64,000 nucleotides of DNA from Stylophora pistillata (GCF_002571385.2 NW_019217912.1:505380-569379); one strand, 5' to 3'. Shown: positions 26,061 to 34,103, numbered from the stretch's first letter. The notes: a model not told the origin generated them from the letters alone. Numbers and translations are program-made.

Positions 26061-28067
26061 ATGGTGGCCTCTCGGGGATTATGGCTTTGTCTACTAGGGA
26101 TGTTATTATTTAGTTTTTCCTCTGGCGTGTTTTCAAGAGGAGTTAAAAGTAAACGAAGCCCACGCAAGAATTCCGTTCGTTACACTGTCCACGAAAAACC
26201 GCCAGAGCTGGTTGTAAATGCTGACCCCGAAGGAGTAAAAGTTCAAGCTAAGCCTTCAAAACTTCAAGTAATTGCTTACCCTCACCTACAGGGATTTCAT
26301 CCATACGAGCATACGGCAGTATTAGGTCCACATAGTCCACCAGTGAATATTGGACCAAATGCACCTCCGGTTCACATTGGACCTCATGTACCAGCTGTTC
26401 ATCTTAGTCCCAGGGTTCCAAGTCTTCACTACGGAACAAACGCTCCTCTTCTTCACGTCAGGCCTCATGTGCCTTTTGTTCATATGACGCCCCCAGTCCA
26501 CGGCATAAACGCTCTTACCGGTCCTCCAGTGCACGTTATGTCACCATCTACAGTATATCATCAACCACCGATTGTTTTTCATCAGCCACACTTTCAATAT
26601 CCTGGATACGGTGGTTTTGGTGGATTTCCAGGCTATGGAGGCTTTGGGTATGGTGGCTATGGTTGCTATGGTGGTGGACCTGGTTTCTATGGGCGCTCCA
26701 CTATACCTGAAAATGATGAAGAGGACGACGACGATGATAATAATGTTGATAACAATAACGATGGCAACGACTCTAAGAACGACGAGGGCGAAGCTCATGA
26801 ACATCGCAAGCACAAGGGAAAATCGAAGCGCGAAGTTGTTTCACAGAAAGTCAAGCGCCAGTGGTTTGGGTGGCATCCGTTCCCACATACAGTTAATGTA
26901 GGACCTCACACTCCACCCATTCACGTTGGACCTCATTATCCCCCGGTTCATATCGGGCCTCACGTCCCTGCAGTTCATATAGGACCTCATGTTCCAGTCA
27001 TAAACGTCCCATCCCATGTCCCAGCGATTCATGTACGTCCCCATGTTCCTGCTGTGCATTTAGGACCGCCTGTTCCTATCATTAATGCCGGAAACCACTT
27101 CCCAGCGGTGCATGTCACTTCTCCACCCACGATCTACCACCGTCCTCCTATTGTCATTCACCAACCTCATATCGTCCATCCTTATGGCGGATGGAAGAAA
27201 CGCTCAAAGATCGCCCAAGCTGTTAAATCTAAAAAGGAGAGTTCTACGAAGGAAGTTAAAGCAGAGGAGCAAAGCAGTGGTGATGAAGACCCAAAACAGG
27301 AAGAAGAAAAGCCACAGGAAACCCCCGCCTCCGAGCAATTCAGTGGTGAACCAGAACAAAGTAGTGGACAACCACCACATGCAGACGAGGAAAAGCAAGT
27401 CAACGTAAAATCTACCCATGAAAGAACAAGGCGACAGATGTTTTCTAATGCCAACTCCGGACCAAATGGCGACTCAGTGATATTTGTCCATCCAAATGAA
27501 CACAATGCGGCAAGTCCTGCAGGATTGGGTGACCTGGCAGGTGGCCATGGTAACCCTTTGGAAGGCGGTAACCCAGCAGAAGGGTTTGGGGATCTTTCCT
27601 CGAAGGCCTTCGGAGATGGATTTAACCCTAGTTCGTTAGCAGAGGGTGGACAAGGAGGAGAGTTGGGCGCTGGTGGTGATAGCCTTGCTGGACTCGCAGG
27701 AGCAAGCCTCGGTGGAGCAGCAGGCCTGGCTGGAAACGAAGCTCCCCCTATGGGGGCCAATAGCTTCTCTGACGCTGGAGGGCTGGGAGGTCTCGGCGGA
27801 CAAGGAGGTCTTGGTGGACAGGGAGGTCTTGGAGGACAGGGTGCTCCAGAAGAGCTTCCTGGTGGTCTTGCAGGTCTAGGTGGGGCCATGGGATCGCCAA
27901 TGGGTGGGGGTCTTGGCGGAGAAGAAGCTAGGTCGGCGGTTCCTCGCTCTAGTATCCCTGGAAGACTAAGAAAGATAACCAGAGGGTACCTCACACGAAA
28001 CCCTCTTGACAATGGAGCAAATGCTCCCATTGTCAAGAAAACGTACATTCCACGACCAGGACAATAA
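26061..28067 (+). CDS. Secreted 668-aa modular His/Pro/Gly-rich precursor (single coding exon)
   Basis: Long ORF. MVASRGLWLCLLGMLLFSFSSG is signal-peptide-like. Two 9-mer His/Pro repeat blocks, YGG/FGG and GGLGGQ tracts, acidic spacers and dibasic sites. Acceptor ending 26015 upstream; donor at 28090 downstream. Confidence 0.9.
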   Translation: MVASRGLWLCLLGMLLFSFSSGVFSRGVKSKRSPRKNSVRYTVHEKPPELVVNADPEGVKVQAKPSKLQVIAYPHLQGFHPYEHTAVLGPHSPPVNIGPNAPPVHIGPHVPAVHLSPRVPSLHYGTNAPLLHVRPHVPFVHMTPPVHGINALTGPPVHVMSPSTVYHQPPIVFHQPHFQYPGYGGFGGFPGYGGFGYGGYGCYGGGPGFYGRSTIPENDEEDDDDDNNVDNNNDGNDSKNDEGEAHEHRKHKGKSKREVVSQKVKRQWFGWHPFPHTVNVGPHTPPIHVGPHYPPVHIGPHVPAVHIGPHVPVINVPSHVPAIHVRPHVPAVHLGPPVPIINAGNHFPAVHVTSPPTIYHRPPIVIHQPHIVHPYGGWKKRSKIAQAVKSKKESSTKEVKAEEQSSGDEDPKQEEEKPQETPASEQFSGEPEQSSGQPPHADEEKQVNVKSTHERTRRQMFSNANSGPNGDSVIFVHPNEHNAASPAGLGDLAGGHGNPLEGGNPAEGFGDLSSKAFGDGFNPSSLAEGGQGGELGAGGDSLAGLAGASLGGAAGLAGNEAPPMGANSFSDAGGLGGLGGQGGLGGQGGLGGQGAPEELPGGLAGLGGAMGSPMGGGLGGEEARSAVPRSSIPGRLRKITRGYLTRNPLDNGANAPIVKKTYIPRPGQ

Positions 28068-31455: not shown

Positions 31456-34103
31456 ATGAAATGGTTTTGTTCTGCCGACGGGTTTCGTGCAACGTTATGT
31501 CTTATTTGTTTGTTGGCTTTTAATGGGAGCGTTAAACCAAAACCATTACCTGAAGGTGGAGGAACAGTGACTCAAACTGGTGAGCCGTCACATTTTCAAG
31601 TTGATGACAAAGCCGCTGAAATTGAAGTCAATGCCAACCCTGCTGGAGTAAAAGTCAACGCTAAGCCAGCCTCTCTTCAAGTTGTAGCAAAGCCGGGTGT
31701 CCCAGCTGTACCAATATTTCATCCAGCGATACATCTTGCCCAACACTATGCGCCTCCACCAGTTATTCATCACAGTGCGGCCATGTTTTATCATGACGGA
31801 TTTCACTATCCCTTCGGTCACGACTGGTTTTACAATGGAATAAAACGACATAAGTTTCCTAGACCACGGAAAGATCAAATACAAGTTCGAACGCACAAGT
31901 CTGATATTCCTCGGTCAAAACATCACAAGAAGGCCTCTCAATCTCACAAGAGACAATTTATCTCTGCGGTTCCGCAGTTTGCGCAACCATCATCCCTCGC
32001 TGCCTTTAGAGGTCTCGGTGCGCTCGGAACTTACGGATATGGAGCCTCACCTCAGTACGGTTCTCTTGTCGGTGCACCACTGGGAGTTTACGGCTTACGT
32101 CAAAATCCTCAAACAGGATTACTTTCCTCATCTCCCCAACTCACTCCTCAGCAAGGTCTACAAGAGTCGGGGATGTCAAGAGGTCTTTTGCCCTCGGAAA
32201 GTACTTCAACAGGCACAGATACAACTGACATACTGCGGAGATATCAGAGGCTTTACGGTGAACTTAATGCCCTTGCTAACATGTACAACTCGCTTGTAAG
32301 GCAAAGAAGTTTGCATTCCCTAACAGACATGGGATATGCTGGGGGAATGGGCGTTGGAGGCGCTCTCCGCATGAATACGGATGGTAGTGACCCTCGGCTC
32401 GGACAATTAGGTTTGGGAGCTCCGCGAGGCCCAGTGATGGGTTACACAAGAACTTACATCCCCTCCCCACTGGTGAAGCTTTATGGCACTCAGGCGTCAC
32501 TTCCCCAGACCAATAGCTTTCTTGGTGTACCTGGTATGTTTGCTAAAAATAGCCGTTACTGAATTACTGTTGCTTCTTGAAGCATTATATTTTGTTTTTG
32601 GATGATGAAGAATGATTTTAATATTTTGTTTTTGGATGATAAAGAATAATTTTGATATATCTAAGTCAATATTTGCAATTAAAAAATTGTCTAAAGGTTA
32701 TAAAGAGAGTTTTTGTAGGCTGAAGATTACTTTTGACTCACTGTTTCTTTTCCCAAATTTTTCCCTGTACTTGAATGCATTTATCTTATTCTTATCACAG
32801 TGGCATTAAACAAATGTGGAATGTTTTTTCGGATAGTCATAGTATATTTTCAGCCCTTTTGGTGTCATTTGCTGTTTGTGTGTGTGTGTGTGTGTGTGTG
32901 TTATTGTTGTTGTTTGTTTCCGTTGTTTCTATTTTTATGTTGGTTTTAACTAATCATTATGATCGGCGAAACCGTAAAAATTGCGTGAATAACATATTTC
33001 TCCTTTACTTTTCTGCAGGGGCGTCGTTAGTTGGGCAACCACCCATGGCCCGATATCTCGACCTTTCTTCTCTGCTGCAGGGCTCACCTGCAATGGTGAG
33101 CAGATCCAAGGTCCCTGCAGCCCCAGATAAAAAAGACAAGAAACATGATCATCAGGATGACACAATGAAAAAAGCAAAAGTGAAACGACAAGCGCTAGTT
33201 GAACCGATTTTAACCACCGAGGATCCCGACAGCATGGACGATTTATTCCAAGGTGACTATGACCAGGACTACAAGCGGCAGATGATATTAACGCCTGCCC
33301 TGGAGACGCTACAGCAACTTCAGCCACTGCAACCATTATATACTCGACAGGCCATACAGCCACAATCGTTACAGCTACGTCAACTACAGCTTCAGCCACA
33401 GATACTACCTGAGCAACCGTTAACCCGTCAGTCGCTTGCTTTGCAGGGCACCGGTATGCAACCAACGGGTATGCAGCAGCAGATTGGAATACCAGGGACT
33501 CAGCAGCTTGGTCTCCTTCCCTTGACCTCCACACCACTGCGCTACATGACGCCATCTTTGGTGACACCACTTGAATCAATGGGTTCCAGCTTTGATGGAA
33601 GATCATCAGCAGCTGGAGCAGCTTTACCGCAATCGTTCGCCTCTCAGAGTTTAGTGTCACCGTTAATTTCGGGTACGTTCACCCGTCCTAGAAGTGATTA
33701 CGGCTCTTTGCAAGATCTTTCATCCAGTAGTCTCTTTCAAGACAGGTCACAATTTCGCCGTCCCTTGAGACTTGGTTTCCCAGGCAATCCAAGACGTCTC
33801 TTCCACAGACCTCAATACCGAAGGCGATTACATAACTTTAGAGAGGAAGAAAACTTGGATGGAATGCAACCAGAAGTGTTAGGTCGTGAGAGAATCTCGC
33901 AAGAGGGATCATATTCCACTGAAGTAGTCCCAAGTTCTCAAGGAGAGACACTCATAAACTCGCCAGTGGGGTTCGGACCAATCACGGTGGAGGCTAAGAC
34001 AGCAGAAGGGGCACGGAGAGCTGCGATGGCTGGAGAAGATAAGAGACATCGCATCCACAGACCAGTTGAAAGAACGTCTAAGGGCAAGAGGAACCATCAG
34101 TAA
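31456..34103 (+). CDS. Secreted 720-aa low-complexity precursor, paralogue of 26061-28067 (join 31456-32533,33019-34103)
   Basis: Signal-peptide-like MKWFCSADGFRATLCLICLLAFNGSV. Donor CTG|GTATGT and acceptor TTTTCTGCAG| are both phase 1 and join the two ORFs in frame. 17/26 identity to the upstream gene in EIEVNANPAGVKVNAKPASLQVVAKP. Confidence 0.88.
32877..32900 (+). repeat. (TG)n microsatellite in the intron
   Basis: About 12 TG units. Confidence 0.9.

What the first reader, a model, noticed from the sequence alone, without database searches (positions are those of the whole stretch)
26694..34065. Shared processing grammar: modules open with [KR]R|Q and close with [RK]-[STH]-x-[IVF]-P
Seen, openers: VKR|QWFG, TRR|QMFS, HKR|QFIS, VKR|QALV, YKR|QMIL, plus TR|QAIQ and TR|QSLA. 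Seen, closers: GRSTIP, KRSKIA, ARSAVP, PRSSIP, KKTYIP, KRHKFP, HKSDIP, TRTYIP, SRSKVP, KRHRIH, and SRSSVP in the gene ending at 365. Many closers sit where a low-complexity module gives way to a charged spacer. Known: dibasic cleavage followed by Gln yields pyroglutamate N-termini; SxIP is the cytosolic EB1-binding motif, which should be inaccessible in a secreted protein. Inference: the closer is a second, unrecognised protease or sorting signal that releases each module.
Basis: partly seen in the sequence, partly recalled or inferred. Interest (0 to 1): 0.75.

Follow-up and report, generated by a model that had tools for sequence, protein, structure and literature searches.

The report
Conserved unit-boundary motifs in coral secreted proteins
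Three neighbouring coral genes encode secreted, mostly unstructured proteins built from units that start after Lys/Arg-Arg with a glutamine and end with a short Lys/Arg-Ser-x-Ile/Val motif; corals and sea anemones both keep these marks, which look like cutting sites, though no cutting has been shown.

Summary
The motifs are real, far above chance and conserved, but the definition needs revising and the function is untested.

- **Enrichment in genes A and B:** the closer occurs 8 times against 0.29 expected, and [KR]RQ 5 times against 0.59 (0 of 5000 shuffles reach either).
- **Conservation:** orthologues from Porites, Montipora, Oculina, Nematostella and Actinostola keep the sites while the spacers drift.
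- **Not supported:** the two TR|Q openers are at chance level and kept in 0 of 4 orthologue positions.
- **Revised closer:** the core is [KR]-S-x-[IV]. The last residue is P, E or A.
- **Either/or rule:** in the giant gene the closer follows an 11-residue strand-like tag. There it alternates with a second basic residue (188 of 189 tags).
- **Best reading (about 0.45):** cleavage just after the basic residue, not after Pro.

RNA reads confirm both gene models. No Pfam family matched and my literature searches found no description. The scan had already noted this cluster on the same DNA (s1-787312, s1-786235).

The parts
1..365 (+). 3' end of the giant His/Pro-rich gene. Its ORF runs G000:C129 486659-499597, one TAG, then 499601-505741.
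   Evidence: own-genome protein P0093 (6136 aa)
267..311 (+). Last strand-like tag PSVHVNVETS followed by the closer RSSVP
   Evidence: closer kept in 5 of 5 orthologues
26061..28067 (+). Gene A coding sequence: 668 aa, one coding exon, signal peptide, two His/Pro repeat units and one Gly-rich unit
   Evidence: present in polyA RNA contigs; stop lies before the 3'UTR intron
26205..26282 (+). Gene A N-terminal module ELVVNADPEGVKVQAKPSKLQVIAYP, predicted beta hairpin
   Evidence: strands 50-55 and 58-63; pLDDT block means 77 for residues 51-60 and 57 for 61-70
26694..26708 (+). Closer 1, RSTIP, preceded by FYG
   Evidence: R212, S213 and I215 invariant in 9 of 9, P in 8 of 9; kept in 7 of 8
26853..26861 (+). 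Opener 1, KR|Q(WFGWHPFP)
   Evidence: R266 and Q267 invariant; 8 of 8
27198..27215 (+). Closer 2, KRSKIA (no Pro)
   Evidence: KR-x-x-I kept in 6 of 8; Nematostella has KRAMIP; same type as GKRSKIE in the giant gene
27429..27437 (+). Opener 2, RR|Q(MFSNANSGP)
   Evidence: R458 and Q459 invariant; 8 of 8
27930..27959 (+). Closers 3a and 3b, RSAVP-RSSIP
   Evidence: kept in 2 of 4 and 4 of 7; lost in P0007 and P0008
28038..28052 (+). C-terminal KTYIP(RPGQ*)
   Evidence: orthologues have KTSIPRPGQ, HKDVIPRPE, HKDAIPRPY
28090..29136 (+). Intron in the 3'UTR of gene A (GT..AG); non-coding exon follows to about 29730
   Evidence: contigs in X1 and X2; 231 reads in X23, 20 in X24
31456..32533 (+). 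Gene B exon 1 (signal peptide, N-terminal module at 31618-31695, first units)
   Evidence: splice joint confirmed by an X1 contig and 3 reads of X23
31846..31860 (+). RHKFP
   Evidence: orthologues have REKFP, RGKFP, RSNVP: second position not conserved
31897..31911 (+). Closer KSDIP
   Evidence: kept in 2 of 3
31948..31956 (+). Opener KR|Q(FISAVPQ)
   Evidence: kept in 2 of 3
32449..32463 (+). RTYIP
   Evidence: orthologues have KAYIP and KLYLP: a [KR]-x-Y-[IL]-P-S element, not the S-x-I core
33019..34103 (+). Gene B exon 2
   Evidence: continuous in orthologues P0010 and P0011
33102..33116 (+). Closer RSKVP
   Evidence: kept in 2 of 2
33183..33191 (+). Opener KR|Q(ALVEPIL)
   Evidence: kept in 3 of 3
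33273..33281 (+). Opener KR|Q(MILTPALE)
   Evidence: kept in 2 of 3; Actinostola has KR|E
33342..33350 (+).
   Evidence: kept in 0 of 2; motif class not enriched
33423..33431 (+).
   Evidence: kept in 0 of 2
34041..34058 (+). KRHRIH, preceded by GPITVEAKTAEG
   Evidence: KR-x-x-I kept in 3 of 3, no Pro

Best explanation
The tail of the giant gene, gene A and gene B encode signal-peptide-bearing, largely disordered, low-complexity proteins laid out like polyproteins. Units alternate with fast-evolving charged spacers.

Two short linear motifs mark the unit boundaries:
- (1) [KR]R followed by Gln plus a hydrophobic residue.
- (2) [KR]-S-x-[IV]-(P/E/A). After the strand-like tag of the giant gene, a second basic residue can stand in its place.

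I read both as endoproteolytic sites in the secretory pathway, cut on the carboxyl side of the basic residue.
- At (1) a kexin/prohormone-convertase-type enzyme exposes Gln, which cyclises to pyroglutamate.
- At (2) the same or another basic-residue-specific protease cuts before Ser. Ser-x-Ile/Val at P1'-P3' does the work that a second basic residue does elsewhere.
- Carboxypeptidase trimming then removes the basic residue. Where aromatic-Gly precedes it, amidation is possible.
- Where the motif ends in Pro, the released spacer would start S-x-[IV]-P and, after loss of one or two residues, carry the X-X-Pro or X-Pro N-terminus known to stop aminopeptidases in cnidarians.

Shown: the presence, enrichment, position and conservation of the motifs, the either/or rule, K/R interchange, transcription, and the gene models.
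Inferred: every proteolytic step, the enzymes, and the fate of units and spacers.
For: - Enrichment and controls.
- In gene A, between H177 and R266 the only invariant columns are G182, G191, R212, S213 and I215. The spacer that follows varies in length and sequence.
- Giant-gene tags: of 53 tags in 6 sequences, the tag's K/R is followed by S.[IV]P in 21, S.[IV]x in 7, [KR]..[IVF]P in 4, another [KR] in 20, and neither in 1. In 17 full-length orthologues the counts are 82/12/13/81/1 of 189. A basic residue is thus always followed by a second basic residue or by S-x-[IV].
- K and R interchange at orthologous closers. That fits recognition of charge, not lysine chemistry.
- Several orthologues carry KR directly before the motif: GKRSFIP, MKRSFIP, MKRSSIP, GKRSNIP.
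- In the His/Pro region, 11 of 11 [FYW]G[KR]S are followed by x[IV] (11 observed against 0.34 expected for G[KR]S.[IV], 0 of 1000 shuffles). In 17 orthologues the count is 145 of 153. Aromatic-Gly-Lys/Arg is the GK/GR amidation and cleavage signal used for cnidarian peptides (PMC6756747, Methods passage).
- Published mass spectrometry shows Nematostella peptides cut after KR/RR/KK, often before Q (PMC11087051, section 5 passages).
- Q, X-P and X-P-P are proposed N-terminal protecting groups (PMC7523074, Background passage).
- The motifs lie in regions predicted unstructured: 614 of 668 residues have pLDDT below 50.
Against: - There is no proteomic or biochemical evidence of cleavage at either motif in these proteins.
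- By my reading of the 70 sites printed, most monobasic closers lack the upstream basic residue at P4/P6 that convertase monobasic sites usually have (rule recalled, not from a call; no script tallied this).
- S-x-[IV] on the prime side is not a determinant I know for any convertase.
- An 11-residue conserved tag upstream of many closers suggests more than a cleavage site.
- Some spacers are only about 10 residues long (KSSIPLRKRGKR|Q). Two cuts there seem redundant.
- Gly before the basic residue may simply reflect Gly-rich surroundings.
- The orthologue rows are related, so the counts are not independent events.
Confidence: 0.45

Rival explanations
1. The closer is not cut. It is a docking or assembly motif, for example the end-cap of a short beta strand through which units stack, or a binding site for a chaperone, cross-linking enzyme or sorting receptor. 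The proteins stay long, and only the KR|Q sites, if any, are cleaved.
For: - In the giant gene the motif is the tail of an 11-residue tag with alternating hydrophobic residues, P-[RHK]-V-x-[IV]-x-V-[EQ]-[TAS]-[AS]-[KR].
- A related element at the N-terminus of genes A and B is predicted as a beta hairpin, with pLDDT block means of 77 (residues 51-60) and 57 (61-70).
- A low-confidence model places strands on 4 tags of P0013.
- Very short spacers make a second cut look unnecessary.
Against: - The either/or alternation with a plain dibasic pair and the free K/R interchange are what a basic-residue protease site predicts. A structural cap does not obviously predict them.
- In genes A and B the motif stands without any tag.
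- The second model has mean pLDDT 33.8, and 5 other tags of P0013 are not modelled as strands.
Confidence: 0.3
2. One reading: the whole pentapeptide ending in Pro is the signal, and a so far unrecognised protease cuts at or after the Pro (or a sorting receptor reads it), so that the unit ends in ...-[IV]-P.
For: Pro is present in 70 of 70 regex-selected sites by construction, and it is kept at most orthologous positions in the giant-gene tail (20 of 25). Pro at a C-terminus would resist many carboxypeptidases (recalled, not from a call).
Against: - Pro is dispensable. After [FYW]G[KR]S.[IV] the next residue is E 76, P 43, A 21, Q 3, F 1, L 1.
- One tag class keeps KS.IS in 4 of 6 aligned sequences, with KSSIS, KSTIS or KSQIS; P0017 there has KSDIG.
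- KRSKIA and KRHRIH have no Pro in any orthologue except one.
Confidence: 0.1
3. The closer is mainly the start signal of the next product. After a cut at the basic residue, aminopeptidases trim to an X-Pro or X-X-Pro N-terminus, so the charged 'spacers' are themselves stable peptides.
For: Cnidarian peptide N-termini with Pro at position 2 or 3 are documented by mass spectrometry (PMC11087051 section 5; PMC6756747 sections 8 and 15, passages). They are interpreted as aminopeptidase stops (PMC7523074, Background passage). Gene A spacer 1 also keeps an internal [KR]R|[DE] site in 8 of 9 sequences.
Against: - This does not explain why Ser and Ile/Val are conserved.
- It does not explain why Glu or Ala replace Pro at most His/Pro-domain ends.
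- Spacer sequences are poorly conserved.
Confidence: 0.1
4. Chance or composition: a loosely defined pentapeptide picked out after the fact in low-complexity sequence.
For: The motif was defined on the same proteins. It allows 2x3x20x3 variants.
Against: - 0 of 5000 shuffles reach the observed counts in A+B or in the independent giant-gene tail.
- The background is 2 in 25,949 aa.
- The core residues are invariant in otherwise variable stretches.
- Density is the same, 3.8-3.9 per 1000 aa, in all three orthologue families.
Confidence: 0.03

Closest known systems
Cnidarian neuropeptide preprohormones (multi-copy precursors cut at basic sites, with pGlu or X-Pro N-termini and Gly-Lys/Arg amidation signals)
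   Same: Signal peptide, repeated units separated by less constrained spacers, KR/RR directly before Gln, Gly-Lys/Arg at some unit ends, Pro near some predicted new N-termini (rules from PMC11087051, PMC7523074 and PMC6756747, passages).
   Different: Units here are 50-300 residues of low-complexity His/Pro, Gly or Gln/Pro-rich sequence, not 3-20-residue peptides. The units are not copies of one peptide. The proteins reach about 6000 aa. The S-x-[IV] prime-side motif and the strand-like tag are not part of the published rules I read.
Polyprotein precursors of structural or secreted materials, such as yeast alpha-factor (KR + spacer dipeptides), nematode polyprotein allergens and diatom silaffins with RXL sites (all recalled, not from a call)
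   Same: One secreted precursor carries many units delimited by a short recurrent processing motif plus a discarded spacer.
   Different: No sequence relationship, and different motifs. Processing is demonstrated for those proteins and not for these.
EB1-binding SxIP motif of microtubule plus-end tracking proteins
   Same: The letters S-x-I-P in a basic, Ser/Pro-rich, disordered context.
   Different: These proteins carry signal peptides, so they are topologically separated from EB1. Pro is often replaced by Glu or Ala, and Ile by Val. The resemblance is to the string only.
SKI-1/S1P sites, [RK]-x-hydrophobic-[LTKF] then cut (consensus recalled)
   Same: A basic residue four positions before a hydrophobic residue in a secretory protein.
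   Different: The position before the Ile/Val would have to be hydrophobic. Here it is most often S, D, K, T, A or N, and Pro would follow the cut.

Membership tests
Convertase-type dibasic processing site followed by Gln (pGlu-forming), as in cnidarian peptide precursors | Protein enters the secretory pathway (signal peptide) | tested here: met
   Hydrophobic N-termini of A and B read directly; the AF2 model gives helix 2-25 in A. No dedicated signal-peptide predictor was available.
Convertase-type dibasic processing site followed by Gln (pGlu-forming), as in cnidarian peptide precursors | Recurrent [KR][KR] directly before Gln at unit starts, above chance and conserved | tested here: met
   5 against 0.59 (A+B) and 16 against 1.41 (giant-gene tail), 0 of 5000 shuffles. 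Kept in 16 of 16, 7 of 9 and 51 of 57.
Convertase-type dibasic processing site followed by Gln (pGlu-forming), as in cnidarian peptide precursors | Cleavage and pyroglutamate actually formed | not testable with these tools
   Needs peptidomics.
Cnidarian GK/GR amidation and cleavage signal | Gly directly before the basic residue at the unit's C-terminal end | tested here: inconclusive
   Met at gene A closer 1 in 9 of 9 sequences and at 11 His/Pro-domain ends of the giant gene. Not met at the tag-type closers (ETAK|S) or at most gene B sites. The surroundings are Gly-rich.
Cnidarian X-Pro / X-X-Pro N-terminal protection rule | Pro at position 2 or 3 of the new N-terminus | tested here: inconclusive
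   Pro lies 4 residues after the basic residue, so one or two residues would have to be trimmed first. Pro is replaced by E or A in 97 of 145 His/Pro-domain ends.
EB1-binding SxIP motif | Cytosolic protein with access to microtubule plus ends | tested here: not met
   Signal peptides are present, and the repeat composition is that of secreted low-complexity proteins.
SKI-1/S1P cleavage site | Hydrophobic residue at P2 | tested here: not met
   The variable position is S 10, D 9, K 8, T 7, A 7, N 6 ... among 70 sites.
Furin site R-x-[KR]-R | Arg at P4 as well as P1 | tested here: not met
   By my reading of the sites printed (no script tallied this), most openers are plain x-x-K-R (PLTKR, HMTKR, PITKR ...) and only a few are R-x-K-R. 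Closers are mostly monobasic.
Any Pfam family | Match above the gathering threshold | tested here: not met
   No family for A, either B exon, the giant-gene tail or 3113 aa of its His/Pro region, other than one sub-threshold chance hit.

The most novel reading that the evidence does not exclude
[KR]-S-x-[IV] is the recognition site of a so far uncharacterised basic-residue-specific processing protease (or sorting receptor) of cnidarians. Together with KR|Q it dismantles a family of giant orphan secreted proteins into dozens of pGlu-capped, partly amidated low-complexity units, the building blocks of an undescribed cnidarian extracellular material.
Probability: 0.3. Interest if true: 0.75.

Novelty: new variant of a known kind. 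Interest (0 to 1): 0.58.

Why it matters
If the closers are cut, these genes would be among the largest polyprotein precursors known in animals, with about 18 His/Pro domains plus about 16 Gln-started units in one roughly 6000-aa protein. They would also define a new prime-side determinant for monobasic processing in an early-branching phylum.

The prediction is directly testable. It names exact peptide termini that existing Nematostella peptidomics data could be searched for.

It would also show how an abundant orphan protein family, invisible to domain-based matrisome surveys, is matured. Gene A reaches depths of 100-280 in one RNA run.

If the closers are not cut, the motif is still a well-conserved short linear motif in extracellular disordered proteins, a class for which few motifs are known.

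Tried and rejected
- **Pfam:** scans of all pieces gave nothing.
- **ESM Atlas:** only a sub-threshold low-complexity look-alike, score 0.77.
- **Paralogues:** own-genome searches with gene A and with the giant-gene tail found only the loci themselves, so there are no further paralogues at this sensitivity.
- **Literature:** six searches found no paper describing these proteins or an extracellular [KR]SxIP signal. 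These included 'LOC5512467' with 0 papers, nematocyst plus histidine-/proline-rich, SxIP plus secreted, and matrisome plus Nematostella. The Hydractinia nematocyst proteome paper (PMC12945647) and the Nematostella matrisome paper (PMC12549020) were read as passages only and do not mention such a family. WHPFP and FSNANSGP do not occur in the main text of PMC6756747.
- **Lysine chemistry:** a lysine-directed modification (lysyl oxidase, transglutaminase) was considered and rejected because K and R interchange at orthologous sites.
- **O-glycosylation:** mucin-type O-glycosylation (Pro at +3; rule recalled) was considered unlikely, because Ser, not Thr, is strongly preferred (61 S against 4 T of 70) and Pro is dispensable.
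- **SKI-1/S1P and furin:** their consensus sites do not fit.
- **Structure models:** both are low confidence (mean pLDDT 41.2 and 33.8). I use them only to say the regions look unstructured. No fold search was run on them.
- **Gene B handling:** it was handled exon by exon throughout. I did not make or search a joined coding sequence.
- **Giant ORF handling:** it was translated as two pieces on either side of its TAG and never read through.
- **Organism:** I did not verify its name. Here I only saw runs labelled as coral, and named orthologues from Porites, Montipora, Oculina, Nematostella and Actinostola.

Full report
**What is there.** The window is G000:C129:505380-569379. The finding's span holds two genes on the + strand.

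- Gene A is one coding exon, 26061-28067 (668 aa). It begins with a hydrophobic signal-like N-terminus.
- Gene B has two coding exons, 31456-32533 and 33019-34103. I derived this from a GTATGT donor and a CAG acceptor in matching phase.

RNA supports both models.
- Gene A is held at about 0.9 of its sampled words in contigs of 6 runs recorded as polyA RNA, from 3 studies.
- Laid reads and contigs confirm the gene B joint (one 2754-nt contig of X1 and 3 reads of X23).
- They also reveal an intron in gene A's 3'UTR, 28090-29136 (GT..AG), with contigs in X1 and X2, 231 reads in X23 and 20 in X24. It lies after the stop codon, so the coding sequence is unaffected.

I treated gene B exon by exon in all searches and alignments.

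The ORF that ends at window 365 is the end of a giant gene upstream. Its reading frame runs C129 486659-499597 (4313 codons, 'G1'), one TAG, then 499601-505741 (2047 codons, 'G2'). I translated the two pieces apart.

Composition-preserving shuffles give the following.
- [KR]RQ: 5 observed against 0.59 expected.
- None of 5000 shuffles reaches either count.

The motif was defined on these same proteins, so I looked for independent tests.
It has 16 [KR]RQ (15 followed by a hydrophobic residue) against 1.41 expected, and 6 closers against 0.66 expected.
- *Background.* Other open frames of the window (25,949 aa) hold 2 closers and 1 opener. Five other long ORFs hold none.
- *Orthologues.* Gene A has 8 relatives, including Nematostella LOC5512467 and an Actinostola model. 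In their alignment the openers R266-Q267 and R458-Q459 are invariant.
- *Closer 1 in that alignment.* R212, S213 and I215 are, with G182 and G191, the only invariant columns between H177 and R266. The spacer that follows ranges from a few to about 50 residues and is not alignable.
- *Gene B.* It has two full-length relatives (one in a cluster with a Montipora protein) plus the B-part of the Actinostola model. KSDIP, RSKVP and the three KR|Q sites are kept.
- *G2 relatives.* There are five relatives from the representative search and 17 full-length proteins of 4548-6329 aa from a later search. These include an Oculina protein and this genome's own model, P0093.

Retention at aligned positions:

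| Motif | Gene A | Gene B | G2 |
|---|---|---|---|
| Dibasic openers | 16 of 16 | 7 of 9 | 51 of 57 |
| Regex-fitting closers | 17 of 23 | 5 of 10 | 20 of 25 |

Across the three families there are 70 closers in 18,189 aa, or 3.8-3.9 per 1000 aa in each family.

**What does not hold.**
- Monobasic xRQ is at chance (5 against 4.68).
- KRSKIA and KRHRIH do not fit the stated regex. Orthologues keep KR-x-x-I only (6 of 8 and 3 of 3).
- RHKFP and RTYIP have a non-conserved second residue. RTYIP belongs to a different small element, [KR]-x-Y-[IL]-P-S.

**A sharper description.**

In G2 every unit starts KR|Q-[LFIVY]. Most units end in an 11-residue tag with alternating hydrophobic residues, P-[RHK]-V-x-[IV]-x-V-[EQ]-[TAS]-[AS]-[KR]. 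What follows the tag's basic residue is strikingly two-valued:

| Set | S.[IV]P | S.[IV] without P | [KR]..[IVF]P | other [KR] | neither |
|---|---|---|---|---|---|
| 53 tags, six sequences | 21 | 7 | 4 | 20 | 1 |
| 189 tags, 17 full-length orthologues | 82 | 12 | 13 | 81 | 1 |

The single 'neither' case is R-DVIP. The rows are related sequences, so these are not independent events. Still, each orthologous unit keeps its own type across species while the x position varies (S/S/A/H; A/T/R/N; H/Q/K/K/D; S/D/H/N/N/K).

In G1 the ends of the His/Pro domains read aromatic-G-[KR]-S-x-[IV].
- 11 of 11 [FYW]G[KR]S are followed by x[IV].
- G[KR]S.[IV] occurs 11 times against 0.34 expected, 0 of 1000 shuffles.
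- In the His/Pro parts of the 17 orthologues the count is 145 of 153. The next residue is E 76, P 43, A 21, Q 3, F 1, L 1.

So the conserved core is [KR]-S-x-[IV]. Pro is one of three common last residues. Gene A's Pro-less KRSKIA is the same kind of site as GKRSKIE in G1.

Among the 70 regex-selected sites Ser dominates the second position (61 S, 5 H, 4 T), and Ile/Val the fourth (42 I, 24 V, 4 F). K and R interchange freely at orthologous sites.

**Context.**
- AlphaFold2 with the 9-sequence alignment gives mean pLDDT 41.2 for gene A. It models only the signal helix (residues 2-25) and a hairpin at residues 50-63, with pLDDT block means of 77 for 51-60 and 57 for 61-70. 614 of 668 residues are below 50.
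- That hairpin is the N-terminal module shared with gene B. It resembles the G2 tag and gene B's C-terminal GPITVEAKTAEG.
- A model of the Porites-type tail P0013 is poorer (mean pLDDT 33.8). It puts strands on 4 of its tags and not on 5 others. I draw nothing firm from it.
- The charged fraction rises from 0.17 before to 0.35 after the window's closers (n=11, p=0.033).
- No Pfam family matches. There are no paralogues elsewhere in this genome.

**How it most likely works.** Published mass spectrometry on Nematostella peptides shows N-termini generated after KR, RR or KK, 'often followed by a Q residue'. C-termini are generated at dibasic sites or at GR/GK with amidation. N-termini with Pro at position 2 or 3 are also seen (PMC11087051, passages of section 5; PMC6756747, passages of sections 8 and 15). 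Q, X-P and X-P-P are interpreted as groups that stop aminopeptidases (PMC7523074, Background passage).

The openers are therefore an ordinary, known grammar applied to unusually large units.

For the closers, four facts point to a cut directly after the basic residue, with S-x-[IV] on the prime side:
- the either/or alternation with a second basic residue;
- the K/R interchange;
- the frequent KR directly before the motif in orthologues (GKRSFIP, MKRSFIP, GKRSNIP);
- the aromatic-Gly in front of the basic residue at His/Pro-domain ends.

I put this at about 0.45.

It remains inference, for these reasons:
- No termini have been observed.
- The usual upstream basic residue of monobasic convertase sites is mostly missing (my reading; the rule is recalled).
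- The long tag suggests an additional or alternative role in assembly.
- Some spacers are only about 10 residues long.

The main rival is an uncut docking, assembly or strand-capping motif (about 0.3). A role mainly as the protected start of spacer peptides is also about 0.1. Chance is excluded for practical purposes.

**Comparison with what is known.** The system works like a prohormone or polyprotein precursor.
- It is not a member of any described family. Six literature searches found no description.
- The EB1 SxIP motif shares only letters.
- SKI-1/S1P and furin consensus sites are not met.

I therefore class it as a new variant of a known kind: a known processing logic with a new, conserved boundary motif in an orphan family of corals and sea anemones. 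Several orthologues come from unnamed samples, which I did not try to identify.

**Relation to earlier notes of this scan.** The scan had already noted this cluster and the KR-Gln units with a strand-like tag on the same DNA (s1-787312, s1-786235, s1-786220, s1-787406). I used s1-786220 as the lead to fetch the upstream gene, and I tested the tag and the module claims myself.

**Verdict.** Interest is moderate to high, because the exact predicted termini make it directly testable.

Noticed in passing
window 28090-29136 and 29137-~29730: Gene A has an intron in its 3'UTR and a non-coding last exon. The joint is supported by contigs in two RNA runs and by 231 and 20 reads in two raw-read runs.
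   Followed up: yes
P0003 (Actinostola QZH41_003850, 962 aa): This public gene model joins the gene A orthologue (up to its Gly-rich unit) to the gene B orthologue (after its signal peptide). It is probably a run-on model of two neighbouring genes. No joint from gene A's last stretch or 3'UTR exon into gene B was listed; only 28001-34000 was laid, so a donor further upstream in gene A would not have been seen.
   Followed up: partly
window 26205-26282 and 31618-31695; also 33960-33995: The N-terminal module shared by A and B (ELVVNADPEGVKVQAK...) is predicted as a beta hairpin. It resembles both the V-x-V-[EQ]-T-A-K tag of the giant gene and gene B's C-terminal GPITVEAKTAEG. This hints that all three genes share one ancestral element.
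   Followed up: partly
window 26709-26852 (gene A spacer 1): Inside the otherwise unalignable spacer a further dibasic site followed by an acidic residue ([KR]R|[DE]: SKRE, MKRD, SRRD, YRRD) is kept in 8 of 9 aligned sequences.
   Followed up: partly
G000:C129:499598-499600 (upstream of the window): A single in-frame TAG splits the giant reading frame into 4313 and 2047 codons. This genome's own protein model P0093 is 6136 aa, shorter than the 6360 codons of the two frames together, so it does not cover both in full. I did not examine how it treats the TAG.
   Followed up: no
orthologues P0079, P0080, P0082-P0086, P0088: Eight of the listed giant-gene orthologues carry a precomputed Pfam hit to PF05387. 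The window genome's own sequence gave no Pfam hit at E <= 0.1, so this is probably a weak low-complexity match.
   Followed up: partly
window 36350-37879 (+): A 509-aa single-exon ORF whose sequence looks like leucine-rich repeats of the ribonuclease-inhibitor type with an EF-hand-like C-terminus. It is unrelated to the finding and was used only as a negative control for the motifs.
   Followed up: no
window 59254-59844 (-) and 62827-63246 (+): ORFs that look like reverse-transcriptase and endonuclease fragments of retroelements.
   Followed up: no
another contig of this genome (note s1-777866): An earlier first-reader note reports an ER-retained serpin with a KR-S bait loop, a candidate convertase inhibitor. 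The bait has the same K/R-then-Ser junction as the closers. I did not check it.
   Followed up: no
window 32873-32901: A (TG)14 microsatellite inside the gene B intron. The window also holds 2 N.
   Followed up: no
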